Source: Macrostomum lignano (taxonomy: Eukaryota). Taken from it: a DNA stretch of 64,000 bases. Both the position numbers and the translations under genes were made by a program. Positions 10,890 to 60,534 of the stretch are shown piece by piece. The notes beneath the pieces were generated by a model, which saw nothing but the letters and a program-made list of their open reading frames with translations, ran no database searches and had not been told where the DNA came from. The stretch is taken from the NCBI GenBank assembly GCA_002269645.1, contig NIVC01000294.1, forward strand, positions 1-64,000, written 5' to 3'. How positions within the stretch are numbered: position 1 is the first letter of the stretch; each line of letters begins with the position of its first letter.

Positions 10890-14938
<4,049 letters not shown>

Positions 14939-19373: not shown

Positions 19374-19461
19374 ATGCGCACAGCACTGTGGCTGCCGTTG
19401 GTAGTCTGCGCCGCGTTGGCCCTGTCGGTGGAGGGCAAACCAAGCGACGCGGCCGTTTCGA
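19374..19461 (+). other. Signal-peptide exon of the giant gene (absent from the ORF track)
   Basis: gccATG, MRTALWLPLVVCAALALSVEG-KPSDAAVS: basic N-terminus, hydrophobic core, V-E-G cleavage-like site, then a phase-1 donor A|gtaagt. Confidence 0.8.
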
Positions 19462-25400: not shown

Positions 25401-28400
25401 ACGGTTGATGAATCAATCAAAACAATAATTTACCATTACACAGAGCCAGCCTGCGAAGATTACATCGCCAGTAGCGTCTGCGCCAAGGCCAAAGCCAGAG
25501 GTAACTGCGACAAGAGCTTCTACAAGCACTTCTGCGGTCTCACCTGCAACTGGCGCAACTGTCCCTGCCGATCGGGTAAAACCATCCGGGGCAAATGCGG
25601 GAGCGATCTCACTAGAAAGGTGACCATCTTCCGCTACAAGAGAGGCCGAGACAGAGAGTGCACCCTGGACCAAGTTGTGCGCCGCGAATCGTGCGGAAAG
25701 TGCGTTAGCAACGTAGAAAAATCCTGGGGCAAGTGCAACTACTGCACAGGCAAACGGGTCGGCAAGAAGGTTGAAACCTACAAGTTCGTTGTCACAAATA
25801 TCTAAACTTGTCGTGTACCATTTATTTATCATTTAATATGAACAGTGTACTTAAATTTTTCAAACAATACACACTTTTAGATCGGGTATCCGATGTCTGA
25901 AGCGAAGATCCGCAATCTACATGTCCTGCAGTCTCTGCAAGTTCCCCAATGGAAAGACTCGCAAAGTCATTGATAGATTCTGCAAAGGCGGCAACACCAT
26001 CATTACCAGGTACAAGGTGAAGCGACAGTCTGGCTGCTACAAGTGCAGCAGCGAGAAAACCTTTACAAGCAAGGTTATATCCTGTCGAAAGAACCCTCGC
26101 GTGTCCACAACGCCGGTTCGTGGCACCAAGACGGAGAAGCTGAAAATCTGCGTGTACCATCTGCGCAGGTGTCGCTGCTTGGAGTCTTGCAAAACCATCG
26201 TCCAGCCCACCGAGTGCAAGCCGAGAAGCCTCATTAAGAAACGGTGCGTTATTCGCAACCGAGCGCCCGTGTGGAAGTCGTTCTGGCAGTATGAGCGTCT
26301 TGTGCGCAAAAAGCTAAAGACAAGGTGCGAGAGGTACAGGAGAACGCACATTGGCCGAGTTGGTAAGTAAAATTACATAGAGGCAGTTTTTGCTTATTAA
26401 AATCAGTTCAAGTGCAGCAAATGGTTGAATTTTCGCTATTTCAGTTTGCCCCAAGCGACTGAAATCAATCACGATTCGCGGCAAAAACTGCAAGTTGTCG
26501 GCAAGAATAACTTTTTACCACGTCAGCTCCAAGTGCGCCTGTACCAAGGTGGTCAAGTATCGATCCAAGGGATTCTACTGCTGCCCGAAGCCCAAGACCA
26601 AGAAAGGACCCTGCAGCATTAAGCGCGGAGTCAACGTGATGCGCACGGTTCGCACAACATTCTACAAGCTGGTGAAAGGAAGTTGCATCAGGCAGACGAG
26701 CGGCAAGCGACACCAGGTGTGCAACTGTCGTCCAAATCGCTTCAAGCGTGATTGCCAGTTTGGCAAGCTCAGCCAAAGAGTGATGAAGTGCCGACTCACT
26801 CGAGGATCGCGAGGCAACTACTGCAAGTGCTGGCAGGAGAAGATAGACATTCCAGTGACCTGCCGCGCCACCTCGACCAGGAAGCTCACCGGATGTACCA
26901 TTAGAAAAGGCCTCAACAGATTCATGAAAGTTCGCTACTTCTATTCTGCTAAGGAGCGCTGCAAGTGCGTCAAAAGGCATCGCGATCGCCTGGTGTGGTG
27001 TGGTAAGTTTTAAAAGCTGCATCAACGCTTCTTTCTGTTTGTAAAAATATACCATTTAATCAATTTTGTTCATATTTTCGATCAAAACAATTTTTTAGGC
27101 TGTCATAGCAAGCCGATGTACGAGGTGAAGCCATGTCCGAAAAAGTGCAAAGACCCCAAGCGATGCAGTAACAGGTGCGTCAAACAGCACATCCGTTACG
27201 TTGGCATGATGAAAGTGCGCAACAAGCGCAAGGTTTGCGTCAGAAAGATTGTAAGCCTAAAGAAAGAGCGTTGCTGCTGCTCACCTGTTGTCTTGGACCT
27301 GAAGCCGCGCAAAAAGTGCGTGTCTGGCAGTCTGCTTATAAAGTACACCTACTCGAAGAAGCTCTGTCATGGAAAACGTTCCAAGCTTGCCCAGTGCTGC
27401 GTTGTTCGGCGTTCTAGGAGCAGGCGAGTCGCTTGCAAGCAGGGAGTGATCAAAACGGAAGCCTCTAGATGCGGCAGAAATGGATATTTCACCATCACCA
27501 AAACCATCGCTAAGCTCAAAAAATGCAAATGCACCAGGAAAGTTCGGCGCTCCACGTGCCGCTGCAAATGTCCAAAGAAAAAGAAGCGCGTTGCGTGCGA
27601 TGCTGGGAAACGAATCTGGCGAGAGACTATTGTGTCATACAAAATCGTCAATTGTAAGTGTAAAAGACGCGTTGTCGCTCGCGAGTTCCCATTGAATCCG
27701 TGCAAAAGGATGCCGAAGTCGCCATCTAAGGTCGGCAAGTGCAACAAGAAGGGCATCAAGAAGCTGTACTACTTCTATTCTGTTAGATCCGGATGCAAGT
27801 GCAAGAAGAGGACTAAAGTTCGAACCTGCCGCTGTCGTAAGCTGATGCTCTTAAATTGAAACTTTTTTCGAACGTATTGTATTTTAAGCAGAAGCATACA
27901 AGCTACATTTTTATCCTACACACTCAGGCTGCTCTAGCAGAGTCTCGTACACCAAATGGAAATGCAACGCCAAGTCGGGACTGCGCACGCGAGTTAAGAC
28001 CTACGTGGTCAGGCGCGGATGCCACTGCGTGGCAAAGAGAAAGGTTGAAAAAAGGCAGACACGTAAGAACACGGCGTAGATGTCTAAATATCTTTTTTAA
28101 TTAAGTTGTTTTGTATCGAGAAAAGTACATTTTAGTTTCGCTCTTTTACAGGTTGCCATCGCAGACGGAAGGTTGAGAAGATTTGCCGGCGCGGGGTCCT
28201 GGCTTTCTTCCTAAGGGAGTACCGACGACGTGGCTGCAAGTGCAGCTGGAAAGTCACCAACGTAGTCAGAAGACGTTGCGATCCTCCTCAGCCGCCCAAG
28301 GAGATTGTAAAGAAGAAGTGCATCAGTGGCAACGTGCGTGTCCTCATCCGCACAAAAATTAGATGGGTAAAGAAAACTATTAGGCTGTTCGATAAGTACT

Positions 28401-31400
28401 ACCATTACACGGAGAAGGTGGTTTCGAAGAGCCGTAATTCTAGCACGGTGACTTGCAAGAAGCGGTTCTTCCCCCCCGATGTTCGCCCGTGCAAGAAAGG
28501 AAAGTACCTGAAAGTTACCAGGTATGTCTATGTTGGCAAATGTAAATGCAAAGTTGGAGCCAAGCGGGTGTTTAAGAGCTGCATATGCCGGAAGAGCATG
28601 AAGAGAGAGTCAACTAAATGTGACAAGAAGCGTTTTGCCATCGTGTCCACTTGGAAGTACAGAAAGTGGAGCTCAGCTCAGGAGAGCTGTATTTGGGTCA
28701 GGAAGACAGTGAGAAGCCCGGTCCACTGCTCATTCAAAAATAGAGTGGTCCGCGGCCGATGCCTAAACGGTAAGACGTACAAGATCACCACTCATGTTCA
28801 ACTGCCTGATCGTAATAAGTGCAAGTGTCTCAAGCTGAAGGAGTCGAGAACAGCCAACTGTTTCTGCAAGCCAATTGTCCGTAGAAAGAAATGCGACAAG
28901 GGCTCTTGCGTACGTTTTACTGTCACCACGCCAATGAAATGGAACTACAAGAAGTCCAGATGCGTTCCGTTCGGAAAAAAAGTCAAGAAGCGCATCATTT
29001 GCTGCTGCAGCAAATCGGTCAAGCGGAGAACATACTGCGCCCCTGACGGTCATAGAAGGGTTACTCGAACTTGGCAAGTTTATTCCTCTCGACCAATTCC
29101 GCGTTGCATTCAAAAGAAGCGGACAGACAAACTGGTGATTAACTGCCAGGCGGCAAAATACCAGACTCGGCTGCTGAGAAGGAAATCCAGTCGAAGCGCT
29201 TGCGGCCGAAACAACTACCTGGTCATCAGATACTACAAACTTCGTCTGAACAAGAAAAAGTGCACTTGCGAGAAATACGTTTACAGGAAGAAACGCTGCC
29301 GCTGCCGCTGCCGACGCGGCGAGAAGTTCGAGCGCAGTTTCTGCAAGAAGGGAACCAACAAACGCGTCCGTGTATACTCTCGAATGCTGTTGAAGAACTG
29401 CGGCTGCGTTAAGAAGTTAGTCTTCCGCGCCAGCAGCGTTCGGTGCCGCAGGAAGCCTATCTCCACAAAATGGAGCCGCTGCAACAAGAAGTCGTGCCAT
29501 CAATATCGCATTGACACTGTGGAACGTCCACGCAACTGCAAATGCAAAAGCCTGATTCGACGCAGGGTGAACATCCGGCGCAAATGCTGCTGCAACAAGC
29601 AGACAACTTCGGACAGCGTGTGCACCAAGATGGGCTGGAAGGTTACAACGGTGTACTACACCTTCGATATTAGAACCCGCCGGTGCGCCAGGAAAACGCG
29701 ACAGAACGTCGTACAAGATGACGAGCTGATCAACTGCAAAAACAACCCGCGACACACTCGAGTGAAGGCCGCAAACTGTGCCCTCGTGATTTATCACAAT
29801 AGGTACTGGATTGACTTCCGTAAGTGCGAGTGCAGGAAGAAGTCCCGACCAGTGAAGGCCGGAAAGTGGTGCTGCTCTAAGAAGCGGCGAGTCAAACGGC
29901 ACTGCAGAAATCGGATGTTTGTGTTTGTTACAACCGTGCAGAAACTAAAAGGAATGAAATGTGTAAACAAGTACTCCTACAGAAAGAAGTCTGTCCCATG
30001 CAAACGGGGCCGCAATGTCAGAGGAAAATGCAACAAGGCAACAGGCTGGGCCACCGACTACATCAGCGAGGCGCGAGTCATGCTTAACTGTTTCTGCAAG
30101 AAGACGCGCGTGCCGAAGAAAAGGCGCTGCGGTAGGCATGAATAATTTAACTTTATACACCTACTGTGCATTCATACACTTCACAGTTAACTAAGCACTT
30201 AATGCTACAAATACTTTTAGCCTGTCCGAAGCCACGATACATCACTGACTGCCTTAAGAACGCCGGAATCGTTCGAAAAATCAAGATTTCCTTCCTTCTC
30301 CGTAGCGGCCGGTGCGTCCGAAAGCGCAAAGTCATCTCCGAGACAAAGGTTTGCACGAAGAAGCCGGTGCTGCATCACTCTAGCGGCTGCAAGAGCAACA
30401 ATTACATCACTGACACGTACAAGGCTCAGAGGCGGGTTGGATGCGACTGCTTCACGAAGTACTTCAACAAGCAGAGGCTTTGCCGTAAGTATATTAGAAA
30501 ATTTACCCATGTTTTTATTGGAAATGATGAATTAATTCAGTTACGCTCATTAATAATAAAAATTTTTCAGGTTGCGAACCTTCTAAAAGCAAAAAGGCAA
30601 TTTGCAAGGGCCGCTATCTCCGGGTTCTGCACTACATGCACTTTGTGAACAAGAAGTACACTGCTTGCAATAAGAAGATCGTCTCGAAGGAGAAAGTTCC
30701 AATCCGTGAGTGTGGCCAAACAAATTAAATATTTTAATTGCCATGAGACCCTTGAACTTTTCTAATGTTTAAATAGTTAAAATATCCCACAATTTCAGGG
30801 TGTCGCAGTTCGACGAACATCGGAAAGTGCCAACCGTCCGGCATGAAGGGACGCATGGTGCAGAGGATCGAAAGAATCATTAGACACATCAAAAAGTGCA
30901 AGTGCAAAACTAAGCGAGTCATCGAAAGTACAAGGATTTGCAAGTGCCCTGACGCCTACAAAAAGAAGGGATCTTGCAATAGAGAGACAGAGAAACGAAA
31001 GATTACGTACTTTAGCTTTACTCTCAATTCGAAGAGAACCAAGTGCCGGCGGCACCAGCGCATCACCTACGAGGTTTGCTACTGCAACAAGCGGGCTCGC
31101 AAGACCACTAAGTGCGACCGGCGCAGCGGAAATAAACTCATTATCTCTACCTGGCGACAGTTCAGCGCTCGCACAAAGTCCTGCGTTCGCAAGAGAAAAA
31201 CGGACATCAGGGAAGTCCAGTGCGATGAGAAGACAACCAGGACCAAAACCGACTGCACCGCTTCCGGTTGGCGCACCGACATCATCAAGAAGCATTACAA
31301 AGATTTCAAATCTTGTTCGTGCCGCCATTCGCCTCGCCCTATTAAGGTGCGCTGCGAATGCGTTCCAAAGTGTCATAAAAAGGTCGTTCGATGCGTTGGT

Positions 31401-34400
31401 GGCCAGCTGGTCATTAAGCAGAAGTGCTACAGGCTTAAGGCAGTCAGTCCGTATGTCAACCAATGCGTGCCATACTACCTAAAGAAAACAAAAAGCATAA
31501 GTAAGTGAAATTTTTCTTAAAAAATGCCTTGATAATTGCATAGCACAGTAGTGCAAAATTTAAACCTACTTTAATTTTCAGAGTGCTGCCGAAGAGTGAA
31601 GTACCAGAGAAATGCTTCCTGCAAAAAGTGCGTCAAGAAATTTCACCTGTGGGTGTACAAGAACATTAAATGCAAGTGCAAGCGAGTGAAGAAATTCTGG
31701 AAGAAGGTCCGTTGCTGCTGTCCCAAGAAGCGGTGCCGCACAACTTGCGAGATGAAAGGAAAGGCAAAAGTAACGCGATGCACTTGGTACAAACTCACGA
31801 ATGGCAGCTGTGTCAGGCACATTGATGTGAGGGTGAAGCCCGTTAAATGTCTAAAGAGGCAGGAATACTGGAGCAAGTGCCGAAAGCAGAAGGCCAACGG
31901 TAGATGGTTCCGTTGCTCTGTTCTGAAAAGTGTGATCAGAAGCGCAGTGAAGAACTGCAAGTGCCAACCCATCAGCACGAAGGTCCATCAGAGGTACTGT
32001 TGCTGTGGTCCCAAAACGGTCCGTAATAGTTGCAACGCCAAGACAGGTGTGACAACCAGGACAATTACAAAGAAAGTTCTTGTCGGCGAAGGATTCTGTA
32101 AGCCGGTTCCGAGAAAGAAGATCATTCCAGCGCCAACTTGCCATGGCACCTACAAGGGCGAAAATTATGGAAAGTGTGACCTCAAACGCAACCAACAAAA
32201 GTTTTTCGTCTGGACCGTGTATCGCCACGGTTGCAAGTGCAAGAAACGCAAAGCTATAAAAACTACGGCTTGCGGTTGCCGGCACAAGAAACCGCTTGGA
32301 CCGTTCTGGACAAAGTGTGTGAAGGGCGTGAGAAAAGTCTACTTCTACTACTTCGAGCGAGTGAAAATTGGTAGATGGCGCTACAAGTGTGTTAAAAAGA
32401 GAGTGAACCACAACGTAGTCGATCGGTAAGTTTTAGAAATTTTTAAAGAATTGAGTAATATGCCTTAGCAAAACGATGTTCTAAAGTTTGGGATCTTTTT
32501 TTTCTTAGGTGTAAACCCTGTGGTAAGCGAGACAAGACGAATCGCGTGTGCAAGGGCGCCTACTGGCTGAGAATCACGACTGGCTGGAGACGAAAGACCC
32601 GTAAAATCAAGATCCCGGGGCGATACCACGGCAGCATCAGGGTCAGCTACCGACTATGCGTTCGAACGAGAAAGAGCAAGCCCAGCAGATCAATCTCCTG
32701 TCCTGACCCGCCGGAGTACAAGGCCAAGTGCAACAACTTCCGAAAGCGCATCTACCGCTATTACAACTTGGTGCGTCAGTGCGCCTGCAGACTGAAGCGC
32801 AGCCTGGTCACCGTTCGTGCTTGTATGTGCCACAAAAAGAACTACTCAACTAAGCGTTGCAACACCCGGACAAACCAAATAGTCACGAGCAACTACATCT
32901 ACACTGCTAAGAAACGAGTATGCATCAAGAAGAGGCGAGATGTTTATAGTAAAGTTCCCTGCCGAGTTGGAAAAGTCGTTCGGGACAAAACAGTTATAGA
33001 CTGTAAAAATGGCCGCCGGAAGGGACTATCGAAGTACAAGAAGGTGCGCTACTACATTTTCTACTACTCGCACTGCAAATGCAAGAAGCGATTCTTCGCC
33101 AAGTGGAAGCTGTGCGGATGTGCCTCAAAGAAGGTAAGTGTTTTATTGTGCTACAATTATTCAATCGTAACCATGAGAGATTAGTGAAAATAATAAATCA
33201 AATTCTTAACACTCACTACACCCAGAAACGAGAAGTCTGCAGAAATGGCAAGTGGTACTCTACCTTGTACTCAGTGACTCCAATATTCGACCGAAACGCG
33301 TGTGAGGTTACCAAGCGATTCGTGAACCGCGATGTTTCCTGTTCGAGAAACGCTCGCAAGAAGCTCCTGTCTCCATGCAATGCGTCGTGCATTAGAAAAT
33401 ATGCCATTTACTATCGTCGTCTCGATCGGCGCACCTGCAGATGCAGAGTCGCGCGACCCATCATCGTCAGGCAGGTATGCGGTTGCAATAAATGCCCGAA
33501 GGTGGGAAGAAACAAGATTACCAAGCGAGTAAGCTGCGACGGTTCGGATGGCATCAAGATCTTTACCACGATCAAGAAGGTGTTCGTGCACAATGGTAAT
33601 CTTTTCAACCGATGGGACATTTCTGTTCCGAAATACACGTGCATCAGGGAGGTGAAACGTAAGAAGAACAAAATCGTGTGCACCAAGGGCTCCGTCATCA
33701 CAAAAGAAAAGTGCGTTGGCGCTATTCGAAAGTTGACCGTGAAGCGCCAGGTCAGAGTCGCTTGCAGATGCCGCGTCAAGTACAACACTGTGCCTGGTGG
33801 TAGATGTAGTAAGTGCCTTTATTGCAGATATTTACGCTTCAATTGTCATAAATTTTGTTTAAAAATATAAAACTTAAACCGAACATATTGTTTTGCTGAA
33901 TTACAGAATGCAAGGGAAAGGAGCCCAAACCACCAAAAGTGTGGAAGTCTGACAACTGCTCGAAGCCCCCATACATGAGACGAGTGACAATTTACAGCTA
34001 CAAATTGGACAAGTCTGATCCGAGAAAATGGAAATGCAAGGTTGTGTCCAAGGTTATCAAGCAGCGCTGCGGCTGCCCGAAAAAGGAGAAGAATTCAGCT
34101 TATTGCAACGGTAAAGGTAGCATCATTCACAAAAAGACATACAAAAAGTTCATCCCCAAGCTTCGATCTTGCGTTTGGAAGAACGTTCTCTCAAAGAAAG
34201 CAGCTTCTTGCTCGAAGGCTCAACTGGCTAAGAATGAACTTCCTCCCAGAAGAACTACTTGCAAAAAATCTACCAACTACATGGTCACTTATGTGAAGAA
34301 ATGGTACGAGGTCGACCCGCGGGACTGCAAGTGCAAGTTAAAGACGAAGCACTGGCGTTGCCCATGCCGTAAGTGTATAAAACGATAAATTTCAACTCAT

Positions 34401-37400
34401 ATGCATAGGTCCCTGATATTTCCTGACACTAATACTCGCACGAATACGACCTATGCTCTCTCTCTCTCTGTTATTACCTTAGTAACTATACTCTATTTGC
34501 AGGATGCGCCCACAAAAACAAGATCGTGAACAAACGCTGCATCAGAGGCCACATAATCACTTACACGGCTGTGAACTTCGTCAAGAAAGGCTGCAAGTGC
34601 CTCAAGACAACACGAGGAAGGAGGAAGTTTGTTACTTGCAAGCACAAGCGGGAAGACCAGCCCGACAGGATCGTTATTGGCCAGTGCCAGAGAAAGGGAC
34701 CGAATAGAAATGCCGGTTACGTGAGGGTCGTCTACGAGAAGGAATATCCTAGACGATGTAAGTGCAAGACAGATCGTCGAAAGCGTTGGGAGCCGTGCGA
34801 CTGTTCTTTGATTCCACAGTATAAGTCAAGAAGCAGACTGATTTGCCACAAGTCTGGTGCCTATTTCAACCGAGTGACAACCTACTATGTTGTGCAGCTG
34901 TCAAGCGAAGGCGGTTCATTCTGTGAGAAGCGTCGCAGATCCGTGATTGTTCGCATTAACAAGTGTTTCGACAGACGCGGACGCCCGCTCAGGCGAAAGG
35001 TGACCTCCGGTTTCGACAAGTGTAGCCGAAGGCGCACAAGATGTAACTATAAAAAGCTCATTCAACAATCGATCGTTAGGAAATGCGCTTGCAAATGGAA
35101 AACGATTGAGGTTATCGGTAAAAAATGCTGTTGTGACAAGCCAACTGTGCGGCGGTCGTGTCTGCGAAATGACACCAAGGTGAAGATCACAAAGTACTAC
35201 ATTCTTGATGGCTCCGGTAACTGCGTTAAGAAAACTAAGAAGCAGAAGTACAAGCTCACAAAAAAGAAGTCTTGCAAGTATTCTAGCGGTTACGTTGTTC
35301 GTTGCACAGGTCGAAGAAAGCAGGCTGTTTACAGAAAATACTACCAGCAAAGTTCCACTTCTCAAACTGTAAGTGCATCCCGTACTACAAAGACTTCCGC
35401 GTTCCTTGTCGATGCATCCCTAAGAGAATCGTTAAGAAGGTCCGCTGCGATGCTGAACGCAACAGGTGGGTTCATGAAGTGGTGGTGCGAACTCTTCGGG
35501 GCAGAAATGAAAGAAAGCGATGCGTGTCAAAGTCTCGATTTAGGTACACCAAAACATGTGTTAGAAAGCCACCACGAACTACGATGGGACGGTGCAATAA
35601 AGCCAAGGTTAGACTAAGAACTACACACTATGAAATCAAAAAGAAATGTCGCTGCGTGCGGAAGAAACGACTGGAAACAATTTCCTGTACATGTCAAAAG
35701 AAAACATGGTGGGTTTCGCTGCAGTCTCAGTGCAAGCGTCACAAGAACGGCTACAGTTATTACCCAAGAATTCTCAAGGGCTACAGGTACGTTGAGAAAA
35801 CGAATCGCTGTGTAACGACCACTCTAAAAACAGCGCACGTAATTTGCGGATGTCCAAAGCCGACTAAGCGGAAGCGATGCGTGAGAAATGCGTGGAAAAT
35901 TACTGAGATCAAGTACATAGTCGACAGGGCGGAAAATACTTGCAAAAAAGTTGTTCGTCACAAGAGAAAGCCGATGAAAGAGTGCAGCACTAAAAAGGTG
36001 CGAACGGAAGAGTCATCGTTTGTGGATGCAAAGACGGGCTACAAAACAATTGTTTACAATGTTGTCGTGAACCGAAGATGCAAATGCGTCAGGTATAAGG
36101 AAACTGAAAAAATCGAATGGCTGTGCGAAGTAATTATGAAATCCAAAATAGTCGAAAGTCAAAGGTGCTTCAAAGGTGTGATTCTGCAAAAGCAAGCCGG
36201 CGAGCCCTACTTCAACCAGGAGAATACTTGCACTGTCGACTACTCAATTATTAAAATCGACATTACAGGTTATTGTCCGAAGGCTGGCAAGGTGCGCCGA
36301 AAGGTGATTGGAGACTGTAGCTCTAAGACTGGTCGACAGAAGGTGCAGTATACTTCGTGGAAGCCAAATTTGAAGAAGTGCACCTGCGAAAGGACCGTTA
36401 AGATTGAACACGAAATTTGTGACTGCGAGCCAATCCATAACCGATACCAGAAGCGTGGCTGCCGCAATCATAACACCAAGTATGTCGATACATTCTTCTG
36501 GACCCTTGTCAACGGCGTTTGCGTGAAAGGACGACAGAGACAGGAGAAGGAGGTCTCATGCAAGGTTGGCCGCTTCAAAAAAGAGTCTCAATGCGATCCT
36601 CTGACCAGAAAGAAGCAGATTACTATAATCCAGCGCAAGCTCCGACACTGCTCCTGCAAGGAGAGAATCAAGAAGTACAAATGCATGTGCAAGTGCAAGA
36701 AAGGTGTACTATCGAAAACTTGCGATTCAAAGACAGGCTACACAATCGTTACAAAGATCCGATACGAGTTGAAGCAGTGCGCCTGCAAGAAGAGAACTAC
36801 CAGGCTCAGGCTGAAGCCTCCCCCGCCATGCGGCAAGAAGTCGATCAAAAAAGGCAACTGTCGCAGAAGCCGCTCAAGTGGCAGTGCCATCGCTGGCTAC
36901 CAGAAAATCACCGTTTGCAAAGCAAAGCGGCGAGGCTGCAGATGCCGGCTCTTGTGCCGCAGCAGAAAGCGCCTGTGCTGTGAGTTAAATATAGAATATC
37001 TACATATTACAGAAATTACTCCATAGTTTTTCTAATGTAAATTAATATCCACTTAAAAAATATATAAATTTTCAGATTGCTCGCCCGATGTTCGGGTGAA
37101 GAAAGTCTGCCTTGGACACACCAAAGTCCGCGTCAGCACGTTAAAGTATTCGAAAAACGCACGCCGAAACCGCTGCGAATGGAAGGAGGTGTCGAAGGTT
37201 ACCATCGACAAGGACTGCTACGGCATGGTTGACATTCCGGACACAAAGCAGTGCAACAAAAAGAACGGCGTTCTGATTATTAAGCACTGGCGCTACCAGC
37301 CCATCAACTGCAAGTGCAGGAAGAGAGTCTACAAAGTCACTAAGGGCAGATGCAGTAAGTACTTTTAATTTATTAATATTTCACTGCTTGATTCGAATTT

Positions 37401-40400
37401 TGATAGTAACTTTCAAATCGTATTCTCTTCTAACAGAGTGCAAAAATGTATGGCGCAAGGTGTCTGAGGGTCAGTGTGACACGACGGACTCTTGCACCAA
37501 GCCGGTGATTTACGAACGTGAAGTTCTGAACGGAATTCGCTGCCTCAAGAAGAGGAAGACAGAGTACGTTACATGCTCGTGCGAGTGCAAGGCGAGCATC
37601 GCAGCTACAAGAAAGTGCGAACGCTCTAGCGGAACCTGGGTAACATCGCAGGTGACATGGAAGCTGCGCTGCAGCCGATCGACCAACTCCTGCAAGTGCG
37701 AGCGGCACATATCAAAGAAGCGACAGAAGCCGAAATGCAACGCAAAGCAGCAGCTGCCGTACTGCAACAAGCGCACCAGACGAGTTGAAGTTCAATACCG
37801 CGAGGAACGCCTTAGCAGGTCAAAATGTAGGTGCTACTGGACCACTGTGAGGACCAAGCATGGTTTCTGCCACTGCCGAAAACCAGAAGTCAAGAGAAGA
37901 TGCGAGGCGGACAAGTACCGCATCAAGCTGACAACAATCACGGAGAGTCTGGACGAGAAACACTGGAGGTGCATCAGAAGTCGCAAATCTACTCACGTGC
38001 CTGTTGAACCGTCCTGCAAGCCGAGAAAATCAGTCAGAAACATTGCCTGCAATGCTCTGAAGGACAAGAAGGAGTGGAAGGTTGTGACAATTCGCAGGTT
38101 GCATCCAAATCTTGCAAGTGCATCCGCATCGTGCACAGGTTCCCCCAGGTTTGCATCTGCGACGAACTGCCGGAGAGGCAGCGCTACTCTGTAAAATGTC
38201 AGCGCAAGACTGGCAAAATTATCAAAATCCGTCGCAGTCGCGTGCTTCGTAAAAGCAAGAACGGCAAGAAGTCGTGCAACATCGTCATCAAGACCACTGT
38301 GAAGCCAGTCAGCTGTGGCGACGGTACCTGGCGCTACGTTGGCAGCCCTGCGTGCCAAATGCTTGCCAAGAAGGGATGCAACAGCTACAGAAAGTACAAG
38401 AGGATCGTGCGGAAGGGCTGTACCTGCAAAGCCGAGTTCAAGCGCAAGCCGTGCAAGTGCTGTAAGTGCTGAGTACTGCATTCTAAATTTCACATTCTTA
38501 CAGGATAAGTTAAAAAACAAACGCCAACGAGTTGAGTATGCTGAACTAAATGTTTTACATAATTTTAGGCTGCCCAAAGCCGAAAAAGACGCGCATCTGC
38601 AGTGCCGATGGTCGGCGATTCCTGTTCACCAAATACATATACGAGAGGCGTAGCTGCAAGTGCGTCAGAAGCACAAGACGCTGGTCTGTGCCAGTTGGTA
38701 TGTCTAGTTCCAGAACTACGCTCATACTATTAAAATACTCGTTGAACTTTGAGGCTCTAAAGGTCAAACAAAAAACACCTATTCACGCACGATTTGAATC
38801 CCTCAGAGTGCAGTCAATCTGTTCGAAGGCGGAAGAAATGCCTCAAGGATGGTAGAGAGAAGATTGTGAAAACTGTTTTCCGTCCAGTCAACTGCGCTTG
38901 CAAGAAGTTTAACAGAACCTCTTGGTGCCGCTGCAGTAAGTCTAACGGCTCGATTGATTAGTAAATATAGATTCTAAAAAATATATTAAAATACATTGAG
39001 TTTAAACTTGTTCGAAAATTATCCGTCTGAACTCGACAGGATGTCCAAAGCCAGTTAGAGAAAGCCGATGCGACTCAGAGAAGCGACAGAAGGTTATGAC
39101 TTTGGTGCAATTCCGGCTTAAGGGATGCAAGTGCCAGTTCAGACAAGACGTCACGCGACATACAATCCGTGAGTTTGCATGGTAGACTAAAGTTAAAGTA
39201 TTGCTATACTACTAGTAGTAGAAAATGATGAACAAATGTAGTGAATACAAACTCTATGATTTCGCTATACAAATTATCCAGGCTGCAAAAAGGGAGGCCG
39301 CAAGAAGTACCGCAAGGTTGGAAAATGCAACATGACTACCAGGATGCAGCTGTACGAGTACTATCAGTCCGAATTCGACGAGGTGAACTGCGTGTGCAAG
39401 AAGAAAAAGATGAGAATCTACAAGCCATGCAGTAAGATTTTTTGAAGCCCCCCCCCTCAATGAATGAAATTTTGTAGACTATTATGCTTGCACTATTCAA
39501 TATTTATTATTTCAGAATGCAAAGGAAGCTCTCGCAAGGTTATTCAACCATGCAACAAGGCCTGCCGAAAGATGGTCCAAGTTACACGGTACCGAATATC
39601 CAAGACGACGTGTCAGCGCAGATCGTACAAGTTCCAGCAGGTCTGCTGCTGCCTCGGCAAGCGGTACAGCATCAAGAGGTGCGATCCAAAGAAGGCAATG
39701 CAAATCACCATTAATAGGTGGGAGAAGATGGAGCAAGACGAGAACTTTGAGTCCGTGTGCAATTGGAAGGAGAAGGAACGACGAACACCAATAACCGGCT
39801 GCAACACCCGCAAGGTCACTTTCAAGGACACAAATGTGTTAAAAGCAAGTACACCCGATCATACTTCAAATATGTGATCCAAGGCAGAAAGAGCAAGAGG
39901 GGAACAGTTTGCAAGTGCGTGAAAACCAGAGTGCGTCAGGAAACCCGATACTGCAAGTGTCCCCGCAGCCGCATCAGCAAAAAGAAGTGCAGGAATAACA
40001 ACGTTCTTGTGTCTACAAAGACTATGTATATTTTGGAGGATGGTCAATGCCGCAGCTACACCAGCCATTCCGAGAAGGTTCTCAGATGTGCTAAATCCAT
40101 TAAGAGAAAGTTTAAATGGAGCAAGTGTGACAAACGTACATGCAAGCAGAAGAAGTATGGAACCCTGTGCTCGTTCAGAAATTGCAAGATTGACATTCGC
40201 GTCGACTATCGCAACCCCAAGGTGTACGATTGCTGCTGCCCGAGCTCGAAGGTCCAGATCAAGTTCCTGGAGTGTCAGGATAAGCAGAAACGCCGTGTCT
40301 ACAGAAAGTTCTGGCAGATTTTCTACCCCAAGAGAATGGTATGTAAGAACTTCGCGAAGAACATTTACAAGCCAGTTCGCTGCGGTGGCTGGAAGGCACG

Positions 40401-43400
40401 AAAAGTGTTCCCCGGAGCTTGCCGAATCCGACGCGCCGATAAGCACTATTATCAGAGACTACGCATTCAATACAATGAATACGAGGAGGGCTGCGCGTGC
40501 CGAGCTAAGACACTTAAACCCCTTCGACTGTGCAAGTGTCGTGGCAACCACAAAGTGAAGGTGCAGACGTGACGGCGTACTACAGCACAGGACCATGAGC
40601 TACCGGTTGGTCAAGACCAAGGGCAAGCGTCGCTGCAAAGCATTCATTGCTAAGCACTGGGATTACAAGCCTCCGTGTGTACCAGCAAGCAAGGCCAAGT
40701 GGAACAAGCGAGTGAGCAAGTGCAATGACGGTATCAAAGTTATCACTGACTATCGCAGAGTGCGGGTCGGATGCAAGTGCAAGAAGCAGGAAAAGGTTAC
40801 GACCGTCATCTGCGGCTGCTCCAAGACAGTCACGGAGAGAAAGCGCTGCAGGCGCGGTCGCTGGGAGATCACCAGGTATGGCAAGAAGCTGTCCTGCCGT
40901 AGCGAGCGCTTCTGCTCATGCGTACCGTACAAGTACACGTTGCGGAAGCTTCCTAACTGCCCGAAGGGCTCCGTCAAAAAGAGTCCTTGCGTACGAGGCT
41001 TCCAAAAAGTGGAAGCTCGCCTTTACGCCATCAAGAAATGCCAGTGCACGATGCGGGAGTTCAGCAGGCACAGGCGTTGCCCAGACAAATGCCCGGATCT
41101 TATTTCCACACGAACATGCGTTAAGCTGATGAAGGAGGGTCTTTGCGAGCATCCGCAGCGAAAGGGCACCGTTGGTCAAATCTGTGCTCGAACGTGCGGA
41201 AAGTGCTTTAAGTGCGAGTCACCCAACACCATCAAATATCGCATGTTTGTTGGATTCAGCCTGAAATCTAACGCTCTCTACTCGAAGCGCTTTTACATCA
41301 AGACGATCCGAAAAACGAAGGTCTCTCACTGCATGATGGCTTGCAAGAAGGATGAAGGTTGCAACTCGTTCGACTTCAACAGCCGTACTAAGACATGTGT
41401 GCTCAACTCCGTCTCAAAATTCACTTTCCGGTATAGAATTAGCACCTTCAAGGAGTCTGATCATAAGGTTAATGTCAACATCGTTCATTTCGTCAAGTAC
41501 TGCAAGCACAGTAAGTTTAAGTTTGTTTAAGCTTTAGTGTATAATTACTATCTGATATTTTTTAAATGTATTACGTAGAATGAATTGCACCGTATAATCA
41601 TTGACTTCAGAGTGCCGCTGTGGAGCCTTCACACCTGTGGGCAAATGCATTTGCGAGGGTAAAGGTGTTCTGAGACGCTGCTACAAGCAGTTTACTCTCC
41701 GTGAGTTCTACAACAAGCCTGATGGTCGCTGCGCCCAGCGAGCCAAGAGTCTTCGACTGAAGGCTGACTGCGGTAAGGATACAAGTTCTATTGCTTCAAT
41801 ATTGGAGCTAAAATAGTAATAAAAAGCATTTGTTTTTAAGCCTTTAAAATTTTGGAACTGAAATTCCAGAAAACCCGTGCGTCGACCAAATTGAGGCCAA
41901 TGTCTGCAGAAAAGAGAAACAAGCCGGCAAGTGCCTGAAGGATCGAGAGACTCGAATCCTCTGCAACAAGACTTGCTCGAGATGCGCGTGCAACAAGCAG
42001 TACACCGTGAAGGTTCCTTGCAAACGAGTCAAGGGAGCGAACAGGCGCAACTTCGAGCGAAAGTTCATGCAGGTCAGATACAAGAGGGCCAAGTGCGGCA
42101 TCTGCACCACTAGCTACAAAATCCGCCGCGAAAAATGCAAGCCGCCGGCCTGCTTCGAGCAGACTATCAAGGTGATTGGCGACTGCATCGGAGGCGAGAG
42201 ACTGGTCATTACCTACGCAATTGAGCTCACCGATATGGCTCAGTGCAAGCGAAAGAAAATCGATGAAGTGAAGTACGGCTGCAAGGGAGTGTGCAGCACC
42301 GTTTCTAAGCAGGTATCAAAGTGCCGCTATCACAAGAAGGATAAGAAATACTACAGAAATGTTATGTCCAGCTTCTGGGTGTCCAGCGGCACCAAGCCGA
42401 AAGAGCTGGCATTCACCAGAAAGTACCTGTGCGATCCCAGCGTGTGCCCCAAGGAGATGTCATTCAAGGGCCCGTGCCTGCTGGGCCACAGGTTCCGCTA
42501 CCGCGTCTACTACGTGTTGGACTACAGGGAGAGATGCACAAAATTTGTGAATGCTCATGGCGAAGAGTGCTCCAGAAAGAAGTCCAAGCGCTGCTTCAAC
42601 ATTCTGCCACGCAAGAAATGCGCCGAAGTTAAGAAGAAGGGCTACTGTTTGCGACATAATGGACCGTCTAGACTCTGCATGAAGACGTGCGGTCTGTGCA
42701 AGCCACACCAAGTTCGCGTTGGCAAGAATAAGAAGACGGTTTCAAAGAAGTCTAAACTTGATAAGAAAAAGCTGAAAGAAGCCTACGACATTATCAACGG
42801 AATATCATCTCGATACGGTGGCAGATACCTCCAGAAGGTAACCTGGGCCACGATCGCTCTCTCTGAGAGTGAAGAAGGCAAAGCTTACATCGAGAGGAGC
42901 TTCAAGATTAATAAGAACAAAATCAACCCACCAAACAAGTCAACATCACTGGAGGGGAAGATCCAGACCGCAGTGCATGAAATTGAAGAAAAGAGCGGTA
43001 AAGACGGCATCCAGAAAATTAAGAAGACAAAAACGACAAAAACAAAGAAGCACGAGAAAACTACCACCGACAAGAACAAAAAGGTGAAGAAGAGCAAAAA
43101 CAGTTCAAGCAGTGGCGGCTCCGAGGAGACAACAACAAAAACTATGACAACAAGGGGTAAAGGCGGATCTGGAAGCCAAACAGTTGTCGTTAATAAAGGT
43201 GGCGAAGAATCTGGCGGAGGTTCAGATTTAGAGGAACATATCATCACCACCACACATGAGGATGATGGTAGCGGCAAAGTCAAAGTGACGCGACACGTAA
43301 CCGTAACTAGGAATGGCAAGAAAACTTCGAGCACGTCAAGCAAAGTAATTAGTTCTAAAGATGCCCGATTAGCTTCTAAGGGCGGCAGCAGTAGCAGCTT

Positions 43401-43515
43401 CAGCAGCAGCGGCAGCAGCAGCAAAGAAAGCAGCAGCAGCAGCGGCAGCAGCAGCGAAGAAAGCAGCAGCAGCAGCGGCAGCAGCAGCAGCAGCGAAGAA
43501 AACAGCAGCAGCAGC

Positions 43516-43553
<38 letters not shown>

Positions 43554-43950
43554 AAAAAGCAGCGGCAGCAGCAGCAGCGGTAGCAGCAGCGAAGAAAGCA
43601 GCGGCAGCAGCAGCGAAGAAAGCAGCGGCAGCAGCAGCCAAGAAAGCAGCAGCAGCAGCGGCAGCAGCAGCAGCAGCGAAGAAAGTAGCTTCGGTAGCGG
43701 CTTCGGCAGCATCAAGTTCAGCAGCGGTGGCAGCAGCAGCGCCAAAGTGACTTCATCTGGCCCTGAAGAGTCGGTTACAACCAGCACAATCGAGGACGAC
43801 GGCAGCGGCAAGATGAAGGTGACTCGAAACGTTTCGACCAGCAAGGGCGGAAAGACTCACAAGAGTTCGTCAACCAAATACATCAAGAGCAGCGACAGTG
43901 CGTTCTCGTCAGAGGACAGCGACGCCCTTGGAATGTCCGGCTTCATGTGA
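19374..43950 (+). CDS. Giant secreted mosaic protein, about 6,593 aa, 36 exons: SP-VWA-VWA-(K/R/C repeats)-VWD-C8-TIL-ShK x2-(~5,000 aa K/R/C repeats with ShK x3 and PAN/apple)-Ser/Gly/Glu tail
   Basis: Manually spliced GT-AG exons with consistent phases: 19374-19461, 19841-20418, 20506-20599, 20692-20763, 20979-21553, 21649-21742, 21830-21874, 21995-22432, 22526-22729, 23369-23837, 24475-24878, 24959-25147, 25240-25365, 25444-25783, 25881-26362, 26445-27002, 27099-27836, 27928-28062, 28152-30131, 30221-30484, 30571-30705, 30799-31500, 31582-32425, 32509-33133, 33226-33808, 33907-34368, 34503-36979, 37076-37354, 37437-38461, 38569-38697, 38807-38935, 39040-39168, 39282-39431, 39516-41510, 41611-41772, 41870-43950. 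Four single-base corrections are needed (~35350, ~38108, ~39826, ~40560). The corrected total of 19,782 nt is a multiple of 3. Confidence 0.85.
19930..20599 (+). other. VWA domain 1 (hemicentin/VWA7 type)
   Basis: SLIFVIDITGSM (MIDAS-like DxTxS), FGDP, GGDCPEYSLSGI, VLFLFTDA. Confidence 0.85.
21058..21742 (+). other. VWA domain 2 (hemicentin/VWA7 type)
   Basis: SLIFVVDITNSM, FGDP, GGGDCPEYSLSAV, VMFLFTDA. Same exon layout as VWA1: large exon plus 94-nt exon. Confidence 0.85.
22885..23203 (-). mobile_element. tRNA-derived SINE, family B, in intron 9 of the giant gene
   Basis: Minus strand ggggaccgtaacccagtggtctagc ...ggctcgattc; (TAAA)n tail; homologous to 10475-10816. Confidence 0.82.
23369..25147 (+). 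other. VWD-C8-TIL module (mucin / vWF / IgGFc-binding protein type)
   Basis: VWD: CFAIGDPHYKTFD...GCKYILAE...VRGLCGNCDGDASNDL. C8: WCGII...GPFSKC...YFRSCVIDL...CEIIQAVNEDC...WRTHTDC. TIL: CPANSHF...PCPATC...EGCECKNGYVLDGQRCVRMGECSC. Confidence 0.9.
24085..24394 (-). mobile_element. tRNA-derived SINE, family A (full length), in intron 10 of the giant gene
   Basis: Minus strand gggggttgtgcctagtggttagagc ...ggttcgattc; conserved body; (ATT)n-like tail. Confidence 0.88.
25240..25560 (+). other. Two ShK (ShKT)-like domains
   Basis: CNDAAPAKQCARWKRQGHCKSLFETSGMLMACRKTCGFC and CEDYIASSVCAKAKARGNCDKSFYKHFCGLTCNWRNC show the C-D..C....G.C.....C..TC..C pattern. Confidence 0.75.
41089..41510 (+). other. 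ShK-like domain followed by a PAN/apple domain
   Basis: CPDLISTRTCVKLMKEGLCEHPQRKGTVGQICARTCGKC, then KTIRKTKVSHCMMACKKDEGCNSFDFNSRTKTCVLNS (PAN C-xxx-C...C-x-S-F-x-F...C-x-L-x-S). Confidence 0.78.
41878..42702 (+). other. Two further ShK-like domains separated by K/R/C repeats
   Basis: CVDQIEANVCRKEKQAGKCLKDRETRILCNKTCSRC and CFNILPRKKCAEVKKKGYCLRHNGPSRLCMKTCGLC. Confidence 0.72.
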
Positions 43951-59260: not shown

Positions 59261-59329
59261 CCCCAGCACAGCACTGTACTATAGCTTCATTTAATTTTTA
59301 TATGACATTTCTTTCATGTCTGACATGAC

Positions 59330-60135: not shown

Positions 60136-60289
60136 TTTTTTGTCTTGGCGTTAAAAGGCTTTAATTAAAAAAACTCTACTCTCTAAAAATTCGAACCATC
60201 GTCCCTGCATTTAGCAGTTTAGTCTGTTTACCTCTAGGCTAGCTCTCATGAATTTTAGTCATTACCCCTAAATAGAAAATATTCCCAAG

Positions 60290-60500: not shown

Positions 60501-60534
60501 ATAATCCTATACATGTAGCCAAGCTTATCAAGCG

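What the first reader, a model, noticed from the sequence alone, without database searches (positions are those of the whole stretch)
43090..43950. Acidic Ser-rich tail on a polycationic body: single-chain coacervate glue design?
Seen: a Cys-free tail with about 110 aa of (AGC)n-encoded SSSSGSSSEESS, many S-x-E motifs, and Ser-Gly next to acidic residues (EDDGSGK twice). Established: FAM20C phosphorylates secreted S-x-E sites, acidic Ser-Gly sites accept glycosaminoglycans, and sandcastle-worm cement forms by coacervation of polycationic proteins with poly-phosphoserine protein. Inference: both charges may be built into one chain, allowing intra- or intermolecular condensation or Ca/Mg-triggered curing.
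Basis: partly seen in the sequence, partly recalled or inferred. Interest (0 to 1): 0.7.

Follow-up and report, generated by a model that had tools for sequence, protein, structure and literature searches.

The report
Serine-rich tail on giant flatworm protein
The serine-rich stretch is the real, translated C-terminal tail of a huge, positively charged secreted protein of the flatworm Macrostomum lignano. It looks like a flexible, fast-evolving spacer between two small folded modules, not a built-in negative partner for a self-condensing glue.

Summary
Window 43090-43947 (+) encodes a Cys-free 286-aa tail with 41% Ser, 79 AGC codons, 14 S-x-E, five SSSEE and two EDDGSGK.

It ends a gene of about 24.6 kb (19374-43950) in Macrostomum lignano. 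The product is about 6,470 aa: signal peptide, 2 VWA, VWD-C8-TIL, ShK, PAN and about 100 copies of an orphan 45-aa Lys/Arg/Cys unit, with net charge near +1,230. Public annotation splits it into hypothetical proteins. It is neither Mlig-ap1 nor Mlig-ap2.

In the published footprint proteome (PMC6410801), 28 peptides map to it, and it outscores both known glue proteins. That sample also holds cell debris, and the tissue of origin is unknown.

- The unmodified tail is nearly neutral (net -3).
- Even full phosphorylation would offset under 20% of the body charge.
- Tail peptides covering one SSSEE cluster and both EDDGSGK sites were detected at unmodified masses.
- EDDGSGK lies in a predicted beta-turn of a duplicated module.
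- The poly-Ser core differs by 28 aa and by E/K swaps between two 95%-identical copies.

Best reading: a slippage-generated disordered spacer between two beta-modules. Phosphorylation is untested.

The parts
19374..43950 (+). Whole gene: about 33 exons with mostly 80-100 nt GTAAGT...CAG introns. The conceptual product is about 6,470 aa, about 750 kDa, pI about 10.1, net charge about +1,230, with 529 Cys.
   Evidence: Splice-site chaining and approximate model. The 5' 4,112 aa equal the public model PAA86075.1 / BOX15_Mlig022224g1. Published peptides map to 34547-43812, two of them across predicted junctions.
19374..19461 (+). Exon 1 with start codon and signal peptide MRTALWLPLVVCAALALSVEG.
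   Evidence: Read from the sequence. Same N-terminus as P0002.
19841..21586 (+). Two hemicentin/VWA7-type VWA_4 domains (ORFs 19783-20445 and 21077-21586).
   Evidence: Pfam PF25106, E about 1e-37 each, 1.9e-74 on P0002. Nearest relatives are M. lignano paralogues, then hemicentin/VWA7.
23368..25326 (+). VWD - C8 - TIL cassette.
   Evidence: Pfam VWD 4.8e-23, C8 1.5e-11, TIL 3.8e-06.
25240..25600 (+). Two ShK domains directly after TIL (coordinates approximate, spliced).
   Evidence: Pfam PF01549, 37.2 bits, above the 20.9 cut-off, 2 stretches.
25600..42590 (+). Polycationic body: about 100 tandem copies of a 43-47 aa unit (CxC-x8-10-CxC-x6-9-C-x20). It has 27-31% Lys+Arg and 8-11% Cys, about +40 to +77 net charge per 250 aa, and is interrupted by the ShK-like/PAN island.
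   Evidence: The profile of the unit finds only this gene among 1.84 billion representatives. A 669-aa piece has no homologue in 5.8 billion proteins. The AF2 model of one unit is weak (pLDDT 62, two strands).
41078..41443 (+). ShK-like motif (sub-threshold, 17 bits) followed by a PAN/Apple domain (41285-41443).
   Evidence: Pfam PAN_1 1.3e-08. ShK 0.0084.
41870..43950 (+). Last exon. It carries a six-Cys ShK-type motif (41878-41985, no Pfam hit), Cys/Lys/Arg units, a sub-threshold ShK-like motif (42592-42699, 13 bits), a helix-hairpin-helix region (42769-43002), a Lys/Thr linker (43003-43101) and the tail.
   Evidence: Acceptor at 41869 confirmed by P0001 and by the junction peptide LKADC|ENPCVDQIEANVCR. 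Coordinates. Secondary structure. Pfam ShK results.
43174..43374 (+). Beta-module 1 (SQTVVVNKG...KVISSKDARLA). EDDGSGK at 43258-43278 is the turn between strands 2 and 3.
   Evidence: AF2 single-sequence model: strands 152-159, 171-181, 186-197 and 200-211 of the query, pLDDT 84-90. Homologous to module 2 (local score 132). Peptide GGEESGGGSDLEEHIITTTHEDDGSGK seen unmodified.
43375..43740 (+). Poly-Ser core: about 120 aa, 81 Ser (79 AGC), 12 Glu, 4 Lys, net -8. SSSEE starts at 43447, 43486, 43582, 43606 and 43669. Predicted disordered.
   Evidence: pLDDT 33-40. TRF array 43385-43677. The last 25 aa were seen as an unmodified peptide from the sister copy. In-frame indels of 63, 24 and 3 nt against L001.
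43741..43896 (+). Beta-module 2 (AKVTSSGPEE...STKYIKSSD), with EDDGSGK at 43792-43812.
   Evidence: AF2 strands 341-346, 351-359, 364-375 and 378-389, pLDDT 76-83. Peptide VTSSGPEESVTTSTIEDDGSGK seen unmodified. From 43741 to the stop codon: 4 synonymous and 0 non-synonymous differences against L001.
43897..43950 (+). Acidic C-terminal peptide SAFSSEDSDALGMSGFM plus the stop codon TGA.
   Evidence: Identical in L001.
35300..35620 (+). Apparent frameshift (frame 1 to 0, no usable intron). Two more lie at about 39.83 kb and 40.565-40.595 kb. They are probably assembly indels, and they cause the public gene model to end at 35617.
   Evidence: All 28 published peptides on both sides were listed under one frame of transcript RNA1509_476.

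Best explanation
The region is the C-terminal tail of a giant secreted protein of Macrostomum lignano (about 6,470 aa, about 750 kDa). The protein is disulfide-rich and strongly cationic: signal peptide, 2 VWA, VWD-C8-TIL, ShK, about 100 orphan 45-aa Lys/Arg/Cys units, PAN, then the tail. Its transcript is RNA815_5.1 / RNA1509_476, and its 5' half is annotated as BOX15_Mlig022224g1.

The tail is not one uniform acidic block. It has two homologous beta-meander modules of about 60 aa, and EDDGSGK is a hairpin turn in each. Between them lies a disordered poly-Ser segment of about 120 aa. That segment is written almost purely in AGC and grows and shrinks by replication slippage.

Shown: the tail is translated, stays in frame, and is present in material the worms leave on glass. 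A detectable fraction of it is unmodified.

Inferred:
- The poly-Ser segment acts mainly as a flexible, hydrated, weakly anionic spacer or tether between the two modules.
- The modules are the more likely interaction surfaces, for example for pairing within or between chains.
- If a Golgi casein kinase phosphorylates the SSSEE clusters, the result is a local Ca/Mg-binding or cation-docking patch. It would not be a stoichiometric counter-ion.
- The body's roughly +1,200 charge must be balanced by external polyanions (sulfated glycans, acidic glycoproteins, anionic surfaces).

The producing tissue is unknown. Candidates are body-wide mucus or rhabdite-type glands, egg-associated material, or an unrecognised glue component.
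For: - Gene anatomy and secretion signal.
- Organism and annotation.
- Translation and retention of the tail: 28 peptides of RNA1509_476 in the sheet footprints_Trypsin_intact_1 map to 34547-43812, two across predicted splice junctions. Tail peptides came from both gene copies (I and V variants).
- Unmodified masses of the three tail peptides.
- Slippage signature: 98% AGC in the core against 15-39% elsewhere. Indels of 63, 24 and 3 nt, all in frame, and E/K and S/G swaps against the 95.5%-identical copy L001.
- Purifying selection: 0 non-synonymous and 4 synonymous changes from 43741 to the stop codon (module 2 and the C-terminus).
- Structure: the AF2 model gives pLDDT 76-90 for the two modules and 33-40 for the poly-Ser core. 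The modules are homologous.
- Charge arithmetic.
- Not ap1/ap2: different domain set and transcript ids, the ap1 antibody peptide is absent, and no C-lectin or EGF array was found.
Against: - No direct test of modification exists. The published search could not detect phospho- or glyco-peptides, and unmodified peptides only show that modification is incomplete.
- The N-terminal two-thirds of the core has no peptide evidence in the stored part of the data.
- The five SSSEE clusters are far above chance and match a known kinase motif. They may be selected rather than being slippage by-products.
- The AF2 model comes from a single sequence with pTM 0.26, and there is no PDB fold match.
- The footprint sample also contains actin, tubulin, ribosomal and vitellogenin-like proteins. 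Deposition by secretion is therefore inferred from domains and the signal peptide, not shown.
- The stored supplementary files are truncated.
Confidence: 0.5

Rival explanations
1. The tail is heavily phosphorylated by a FAM20C-type kinase and/or carries glycosaminoglycans. It then serves as the built-in polyanion that condenses with the chain's own cationic repeats (self- or head-to-tail coacervation) and cures with Ca/Mg.
For: - The protein enters the secretory pathway.
- Five SSSEE clusters and 14 S-x-E; hierarchical S-x-pS priming could reach 40 of 81 core Ser.
- FAM20C phosphorylates S-x-E/pS and polyserine, and it is expressed in tubeworm cement cells. Sa-3C joins an SY-rich and a GY-rich region in one chain (PMC12621633).
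- Worm attachment and detachment are sensitive to polyanions and to Mg2+/polycations (PMC6410801).
Against: - The charge ratio is at best about 1:5 (about -235 against +1,235) and more realistically about 1:14.
- The SSSSSEESS-containing peptide and both EDDGSGK peptides were found unmodified without enrichment.
- Ser-Gly is not enriched over composition.
- EDDGSGK is a predicted beta-turn.
- Core length and acidic residues differ between copies.
- The body is made of Cys-rich repeat units.
- The gene is not among the adhesive-gland transcripts, and ap1+ap2 knock-down abolishes all adhesive vesicles.
Confidence: 0.12
2. The Ser/Thr-rich tail, with the Lys/Thr linker before it, is a mucin-type O-glycosylated brush. 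It hydrates and extends the C-terminus, as PTS regions do in VWD-C8-TIL mucins.
For: - VWD-C8-TIL architecture.
- Ser 41% and Thr 8% in the tail, and a T/K-rich linker at 43003-43101.
- O-linked Gal-beta(1-3)-GalNAc is documented on Mlig-ap2 in this species.
- No peptides from most of the core were found in the stored data.
Against: - A 25-aa peptide with 15 Ser and a 22-aa peptide with 6 Ser and 5 Thr were seen unmodified in the 'intact' (not deglycosylated) sample.
- There is no Pro, which is typical of PTS domains: 1 Pro in 286 aa.
- The protein was not found in the stored part of the PNA pull-down data.
Confidence: 0.15
3. The poly-Ser core has no function of its own. It is a tolerated (AGC)n microsatellite expansion in a coding exon, kept only in frame.
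For: - 98% single-codon usage.
- Length polymorphism between copies.
- Substitution density in the tail is like that of the 3' flank.
- Predicted disorder.
- A Ser run also occurs in the unrelated neighbouring nuclear-type gene at 46968-47759 on the - strand.
Against: - The regular GAAGAA interruptions give SSSEE five times.
- All three indels preserve the frame, and the conserved module 2 lies downstream.
- The core sits exactly between two duplicated modules, which suggests a linker role.
Confidence: 0.18

Closest known systems
Mlig-ap1 (Macrostomum lignano adhesion protein 1, MH586844; PMC6410801, PMC8621496)
   Same: Same species. Giant secreted protein with a VWD-C8-TIL cassette and very high Lys/Arg content. 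Found in the same footprint proteome.
   Different: In ap1 the cationic regions are Cys-free Gly/Arg/Lys low complexity, and the core has a C-type lectin and 17 EGF domains. This gene instead has 2 VWA, ShK, PAN, about 100 Cys-rich 45-aa units and a Ser-rich tail. The transcript ids differ, and the ap1 antibody peptide is absent from the window.
Sabellariid cement proteins Pc-3/Sa-3A/B (poly-phosphoserine) and Sa-3C (PMC12621633)
   Same: Long serine runs in a secreted protein of a system that also contains polycations. Sa-3C also joins a Ser-rich and a cationic region in one chain.
   Different: Pc-3/Sa-3 are small proteins (about 200-400 aa), mostly Ser/Tyr, and are proven to be phosphorylated and stored with Ca/Mg and sulfated polysaccharide. 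Here the Ser segment is under 2% of a 6,470-aa chain, has no Tyr, and was seen unmodified. There is no sequence homology.
Casein / SIBLING-type FAM20C substrates (SSSEE phosphoseryl clusters, DSPP Ser-Ser-Asp repeats; own knowledge)
   Same: Five SSSEE pentapeptides. AGC-dominated serine repeats as in DSPP. Secretory-pathway protein.
   Different: Phosphorylation is not demonstrated. The tail is near-neutral before modification. There is no homology outside the low-complexity motif.
Gel-forming mucins / VWF / zonadhesin / sea-star Sfp1 (VWD-C8-TIL multimerising proteins)
   Same: N-terminal VWD-C8-TIL cassette. Very large, Cys-rich and secreted. Carries a Ser/Thr-rich low-complexity region.
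   Different: No C-terminal cystine-knot was found. The Ser-rich region is short, Pro-free and C-terminal. The bulk of the chain is an orphan cationic repeat.
Serglycin-type proteoglycan attachment sites (acidic residues next to Ser-Gly; own knowledge)
   Same: EDDGSGK fits the loose 'acidic cluster + Ser-Gly' rule.
   Different: Both sites were detected as unmodified peptides, and both lie in predicted beta-turns. Ser-Gly is not enriched over composition.

Membership tests
FAM20C-type secretory phosphoprotein (casein / SIBLING / Pc-3 class) | Enters the secretory pathway (signal peptide) | tested here: met
   MRTALWLPLVVCAALALSVEG at 19374-19436, same as P0002.
FAM20C-type secretory phosphoprotein (casein / SIBLING / Pc-3 class) | Clusters of S-x-E/pS or polyserine | tested here: met
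   14 S-x-E and SSSEE five times (no shuffle of 5000 reached 5). 40 of 81 core Ser are reachable by S-x-pS priming.
FAM20C-type secretory phosphoprotein (casein / SIBLING / Pc-3 class) | Phosphoserine actually present at high occupancy | tested here: inconclusive
   Three tail peptides were found at unmodified mass.
FAM20C-type secretory phosphoprotein (casein / SIBLING / Pc-3 class) | A FAM20C kinase expressed in the producing cells | not tested
   No kinase gene lies in the window, no query sequence was on hand, and the one literature search returned no paper on FAM20C in flatworms.
Proteoglycan core protein (GAG on Ser-Gly) | Ser-Gly flanked by acidic residues | tested here: met
   EDDGSGK at 43258-43278 and 43792-43812.
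Proteoglycan core protein (GAG on Ser-Gly) | Site occupied by a glycan chain, so the bare peptide is not recovered | tested here: not met
   Both EDDGSGK peptides were recovered unmodified with high scores (XCorr 9.3 and 4.6) from a non-deglycosylated sample. Partial occupancy is not excluded.
Complex-coacervate cement (sabellariid type) | Oppositely charged polyelectrolytes in roughly balancing amounts | tested here: not met
   Body +1,235 against tail -3 (unmodified), about -88 (primed phosphorylation) and at most about -235.
Complex-coacervate cement (sabellariid type) | Flexible low-complexity polycation | tested here: not met
   The body consists of about 100 units of 45 aa with 4-6 conserved Cys each and 8% Cys overall. 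The fold itself is only weakly predicted.
Complex-coacervate cement (sabellariid type) | Storage with Ca/Mg in dense granules of a cement gland | not testable with these tools
   The tissue of origin is unknown.
Mlig-ap1 / flatworm ap1 family | C-type lectin + VWD-C8-TIL + EGF array flanked by GRK low-complexity regions | tested here: not met
   Only VWD-C8-TIL is shared. No lectin or EGF array was found in Pfam scans of the ORFs and of P0002/P0003. The peptide SRKPRRKNRKSRKP is absent.
Adhesive-gland product of M. lignano | Expression in adhesive gland cells of the tail plate | not testable with these tools
   The gene is not among the ten adhesive-organ transcripts listed in PMC6410801. Its peptides are abundant in footprints but absent from the stored (truncated) part of the amputated-tail proteome, where ap1 and ap2 are present.
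VWD-C8-TIL multimerising glycoproteins (mucin / VWF type) | VWD-C8-TIL cassette | tested here: met
   Pfam hits above threshold.
VWD-C8-TIL multimerising glycoproteins (mucin / VWF type) | C-terminal cystine-knot dimerisation domain | tested here: not met
   No Pfam family was found in the last exon, and the tail is Cys-free.

The most novel reading that the evidence does not exclude
This never-described protein outscores Mlig-ap1 and Mlig-ap2 in the published footprint proteome. It could be a genuine third component of flatworm surface attachment. Its casein-like SSSEE tail, once phosphorylated, would act as a built-in anionic sticker that docks onto the cationic Cys-rich repeats of neighbouring chains or bridges them through Ca/Mg. 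That would give a self-complementary, charge-switchable network, and a protein-borne candidate for the polyanion/polycation sensitivity of attachment and release.
Probability: 0.1. Interest if true: 0.75.

Novelty: new variant of a known kind. Interest (0 to 1): 0.4.

Why it matters
Temporary adhesion in Macrostomum is currently explained by two proteins. The published footprint data contain a third giant polycation that scores higher than either and has not been discussed. It is split into 'hypothetical' pieces in public annotation because of assembly frameshifts.

If it is part of the deposited film, the two-protein model and the biomimetic designs drawn from it need revising. If it is mucus or egg material, it marks a contaminant to control for.

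For the tail, the work narrows the question. The tail cannot neutralise its own chain, and it is at least partly unmodified. So any electrostatic role would be as a local sticker. This can be tested directly by re-searching existing spectra.

The 45-aa Lys/Arg/Cys unit and the tail beta-modules have no detectable relatives and are new domain candidates.

Tried and rejected
- Homology searches: the last exon and a 669-aa body piece gave only a partial M. lignano model or nothing. The profile of the 45-aa unit against 1.84 billion representatives returned only the gene itself.
- Mlig-ap1 identity was rejected on domain content, transcript ids and the absence of the antibody peptide.
- Foldseek of the tail model against the PDB gave no match with E below 0.1.
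- The AF2 model of a single body unit, using 20 internal repeats as the alignment, reached only pLDDT 62, so no fold is claimed.
- Self-BLAST of the model protein returned only the identity hit. An iterated HMM was needed to count repeats.
- Tissue of origin: searches for RNA815_5.1, RNA815_1860, RNA1310_9, RNA1509_476, Mlig008957, Mlig022224 and PAA86075 in full texts found nothing. The supplements of the positional RNA-seq paper also held nothing. The eLife transcriptome tables gave only an assembly-table row with no tissue assignment.
- A literature search for FAM20C in flatworms was badly targeted and uninformative.
- The - strand ORFs over the tail (42885-43844 Leu-rich, 43369-43641 poly-Ala) are mirror images of the triplet repeat and were dismissed.
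- Divergence as a selection test: low divergence upstream of the tail includes introns, so it reflects recent conversion or low divergence, not constraint. Only the syn/non-syn split within the tail was used.

Full report
**Observation**

The + strand has one stop-free frame from 41848 to 43947, with the stop TGA at 43948-43950. The finding's span, 43090-43947, encodes 286 residues:
- no Cys, 116 Ser (40.6%), 37 Gly;
- 24 Lys, 5 Arg, 23 Glu, 9 Asp;
- 14 S-x-E motifs and 18 Ser-Gly;
- EDDGSGK twice.

The Ser-rich core (43375-43740, about 120 aa) has 81 Ser, 79 of them AGC. That is 98% AGC, against 15-39% in four other parts of the gene. It is the only trinucleotide array TRF reports in the window.

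Shuffles that keep composition give these results:
- SSSEE occurs 5 times against 0.1-0.4 expected.
- S-x-E is only mildly enriched (14 vs 9.3, P about 0.03).
- Ser-Gly is not enriched (18 vs 15).

The description is therefore accurate. 'Acidic' is generous, though: the unmodified tail has net charge -3 (pI 5.9) and the core -8.

**The gene**

The window is Macrostomum lignano DNA. The tail ends a gene that starts at ATG 19374 with a classic signal peptide. The gene runs through about 33 exons with short GTAAGT...CAG introns.

Domains, in order:
- two hemicentin/VWA7-type VWA_4 domains;
- VWD, C8 and TIL;
- two ShK domains;
- a very long run of Lys/Arg/Cys-rich sequence;
- a sub-threshold ShK-like motif, a PAN/Apple domain, and two further six-Cys ShK-type motifs (one sub-threshold at 13 bits, one without a Pfam hit);
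- a helix-hairpin-helix region and a Lys/Thr linker;
- the tail.

An approximate conceptual product has 6,466 aa and about 750 kDa, with pI 10.1. It has 973 Lys, 698 Arg, 439 Asp+Glu and 529 Cys, for a net charge of about +1,232.

The body consists of about 98 recognisable copies of a 43-47 aa unit, CxC-x8-10-CxC-x6-9-C-x20. A profile of this unit finds only the gene itself among 1.84 billion representative proteins. A 669-aa piece has no homologue among 5.8 billion.

That single hit, P0002, is PAA86075.1 (BOX15_Mlig022224g1, 4,112 aa). It starts with the same signal peptide and ends at 35617, where the window has an apparent frameshift. Two more apparent frameshifts lie at about 39.83 and 40.57-40.59 kb. 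The published peptides on both sides of them were listed under one frame of one transcript. They are therefore most likely assembly indels.

**Not a known glue protein**

Mlig-ap1 has Cys-free Gly/Arg/Lys low-complexity flanks, a C-type lectin and 17 EGF domains. Mlig-ap2 has 255- and 221-aa repeats, LDL and TSP-1 domains. None of these features is present here, and the ap1 antibody peptide is not encoded in the window. The nearest relatives of the N-terminal VWA pair are M. lignano paralogues at 37-45% identity, followed by hemicentin and VWA7.

**Protein-level evidence**

Searching the supplements of Wunderer et al. 2019 (PMC6410801) for predicted tryptic peptides gave hits in Dataset S2, sheet footprints_Trypsin_intact_1.
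- Transcript RNA1509_476 (= RNA815_5.1, RNA1310_9) has 28 peptides and a score of 106.5. Mlig-AP2 scores 49.6 and Mlig-AP1 scores 31.9 in the same sheet.
- All 28 peptides are encoded between 34547 and 43812. LKADC|ENPCVDQIEANVCR and WSVPV|ECSQSVR are absent from the unspliced frames and span the predicted junctions at 41772/41870 and 38697/38807.
- A second short transcript (RNA1509_39787 = RNA815_1860.1) represents the sister gene copy.

The tail peptides are:
- GGEESGGGSDLEEHIITTTHEDDGSGK, the window allele;
- GGEESGGGSDLEEHVITTTHEDDGSGK, the sister allele;
- ESSSSSGSSSSSEESSFGSGFGSIK;
- VTSSGPEESVTTSTIEDDGSGK.

Their measured masses equal the unmodified theoretical masses within 0.015 Da.

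So the tail is translated in the Ser frame, is retained in deposited material, and is bare in at least a detectable fraction. This holds at one SSSEE cluster and at both EDDGSGK sites.

The limits of this evidence are:
- The sample also contains actin, tubulin, ribosomal and vitellogenin-like proteins.
- The stored files are truncated.
- The protein is not found in the stored part of the amputated-tail or PNA pull-down data, where ap1 and ap2 do occur.
- No paper or supplement I could search assigns the transcript to a tissue.

**Fine structure of the tail**

AlphaFold2 on the last 409 aa (single sequence, pTM 0.26) gives two confident islands. Residues 152-219 have pLDDT 84-90 and residues 341-389 have pLDDT 76-83. 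Each is a four-stranded antiparallel meander. The 120-aa Ser core between them has pLDDT 33-40.

The two islands are homologous (local alignment score 132). EDDGSGK is the turn between strands 2 and 3 in both. The twice-occurring motif is therefore part of a duplicated module, not an isolated acidic Ser-Gly site. Foldseek found no PDB relative.

**Evolution**

A second copy, L001 (NIVC01003319.1, assembly GCA_002269645.1), is 95.5% identical over 3.6 kb. In the tail it differs as follows:
- In-frame indels of 63, 24 and 3 nt, all inside the Ser core, giving 286 against 258 aa.
- E to K and S to G/N/R changes in the core.
- 3 non-synonymous and 3 synonymous changes in the N-terminal flank of the tail (43090-43379), which includes module 1.
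- 0 non-synonymous and 4 synonymous changes from 43741 to the stop codon (module 2 and the C-terminus).

The core therefore drifts in length and charge while the frame and the distal module are kept. Upstream of 42.96 kb the copies are almost identical, introns included. That points to recent conversion rather than constraint, so I did not use it as a selection test.

**Assessment of the coacervate idea**

Points in its favour:
- a secretory protein;
- casein-like SSSEE clusters;
- FAM20C's known preference for S-x-E/pS and polyserine, and its expression in tubeworm cement cells;
- the existence of Sa-3C, which combines a Ser-rich and a cationic region in one chain;
- the sensitivity of Macrostomum attachment and release to heparin, Mg2+ and polycations.

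Points against:
- Charge arithmetic. The body is +1,235. The tail is -3 unmodified and about -88 if S-x-E seeds propagate through S-x-pS, which reaches 40 of 81 core Ser. It is at most about -235 if all 116 tail Ser carried two charges.
- The bare peptides.
- The structural explanation for EDDGSGK.
- The lack of Ser-Gly enrichment.
- The non-conservation of core length and acidic residues.
- A body built of Cys-rich units rather than a floppy polyelectrolyte.
- No evidence that the gene is expressed in adhesive glands, whose vesicles vanish completely when ap1 and ap2 are knocked down.

**Conclusion**

The most probable reading (about 0.5) is that the poly-Ser segment is a slippage-generated, disordered, hydrated spacer. 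It joins two small beta-modules at the C-terminus of a giant secreted polycation, and the body's charge is balanced by external polyanions. Sulfated glycosaminoglycans are known in planarian rhabdites, but that link is only a lead.

The rivals are:
- a mucin-like O-glycosylated brush (0.15);
- a functionless tolerated microsatellite (0.18).

The kind of thing is known: a giant VWD-containing cationic secreted protein with a low-complexity Ser tail. This particular protein, its repeat unit and its tail modules are undescribed, and the protein is prominent in the footprint proteome. That merits a simple follow-up: re-search the spectra for phosphate and glycans, then do in situ hybridisation and RNAi.

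Noticed in passing
window 35300-35620, about 39830, 40565-40595 (+): Three apparent frameshifts inside the coding sequence with no usable intron. The public model PAA86075.1 ends at the first one, so the gene is annotated in pieces. Published peptides on both sides lie in one transcript frame, which suggests assembly indels.
   Followed up: partly
window 40944-47000 vs L001 1-6029: Divergence between the two copies is 0-2 substitutions per 250 nt from 40.9 to 43.0 kb, introns included. It rises to 4-9 per 250 nt in most bins from about 43.25 to 45.75 kb. This is a sharp boundary just upstream of the tail, as expected for recent gene conversion of the body.
   Followed up: partly
PMC6410801 Dataset S2, sheet footprints_Trypsin_intact_1: The top-scoring 'footprint' proteins are not ap1 or ap2. 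They are two vitellogenin-like lipoproteins, a 6,570-aa VWA/zonadhesin-like protein (pI 9.7), a 3,108-aa collagen-VI-like VWA protein (pI 10.4), a VWD apolipophorin-like protein, and this gene. None of the other proteins' peptides is encoded in the window.
   Followed up: partly
window 25600-42590 (+): The 45-aa Lys/Arg/Cys unit has no detectable relative outside this gene in 1.84 billion representative proteins. Exon boundaries often fall inside the CxCxC motif (for example ...CRCR|C..., ...CKCC|C...).
   Followed up: partly
window 45756-50683 (-): A U-box/RING domain (50162-50683) is followed by Arg/Ser-, Ser- and Lys-rich ORFs (48250-48831, 46968-47759, 45756-46244). This is probably one RBBP6-like nuclear gene. 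It has its own Ser run (SPSSSSGSSSSDS), showing that Ser runs are not confined to secreted proteins here.
   Followed up: partly
window 56412-57778 (-): Two adjacent ORFs together match the prenyltransferase alpha-alpha toroid domain (PF00432, E 3.7e-51 and 3.4e-40). This is a protein prenyltransferase beta-subunit-like gene.
   Followed up: partly
window 1-19000 and 47786-62864: Very dense minisatellite arrays with periods of 4-52 nt, many with 15-190 copies. An example is the 48-nt unit repeated 49 times at 60525-62864. They generate long spurious ORFs on both strands.
   Followed up: no
window 42769-43002 (+): The region just before the Lys/Thr linker (KLKEAYDIINGISSRYGGRYLQKVTWATIALSESEEGKAYIERSF...AVHEIEEK) is predicted as helix - beta-hairpin - helix (pLDDT about 60-67). 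It has no Pfam match. Three of the most readily detected peptides come from it.
   Followed up: no
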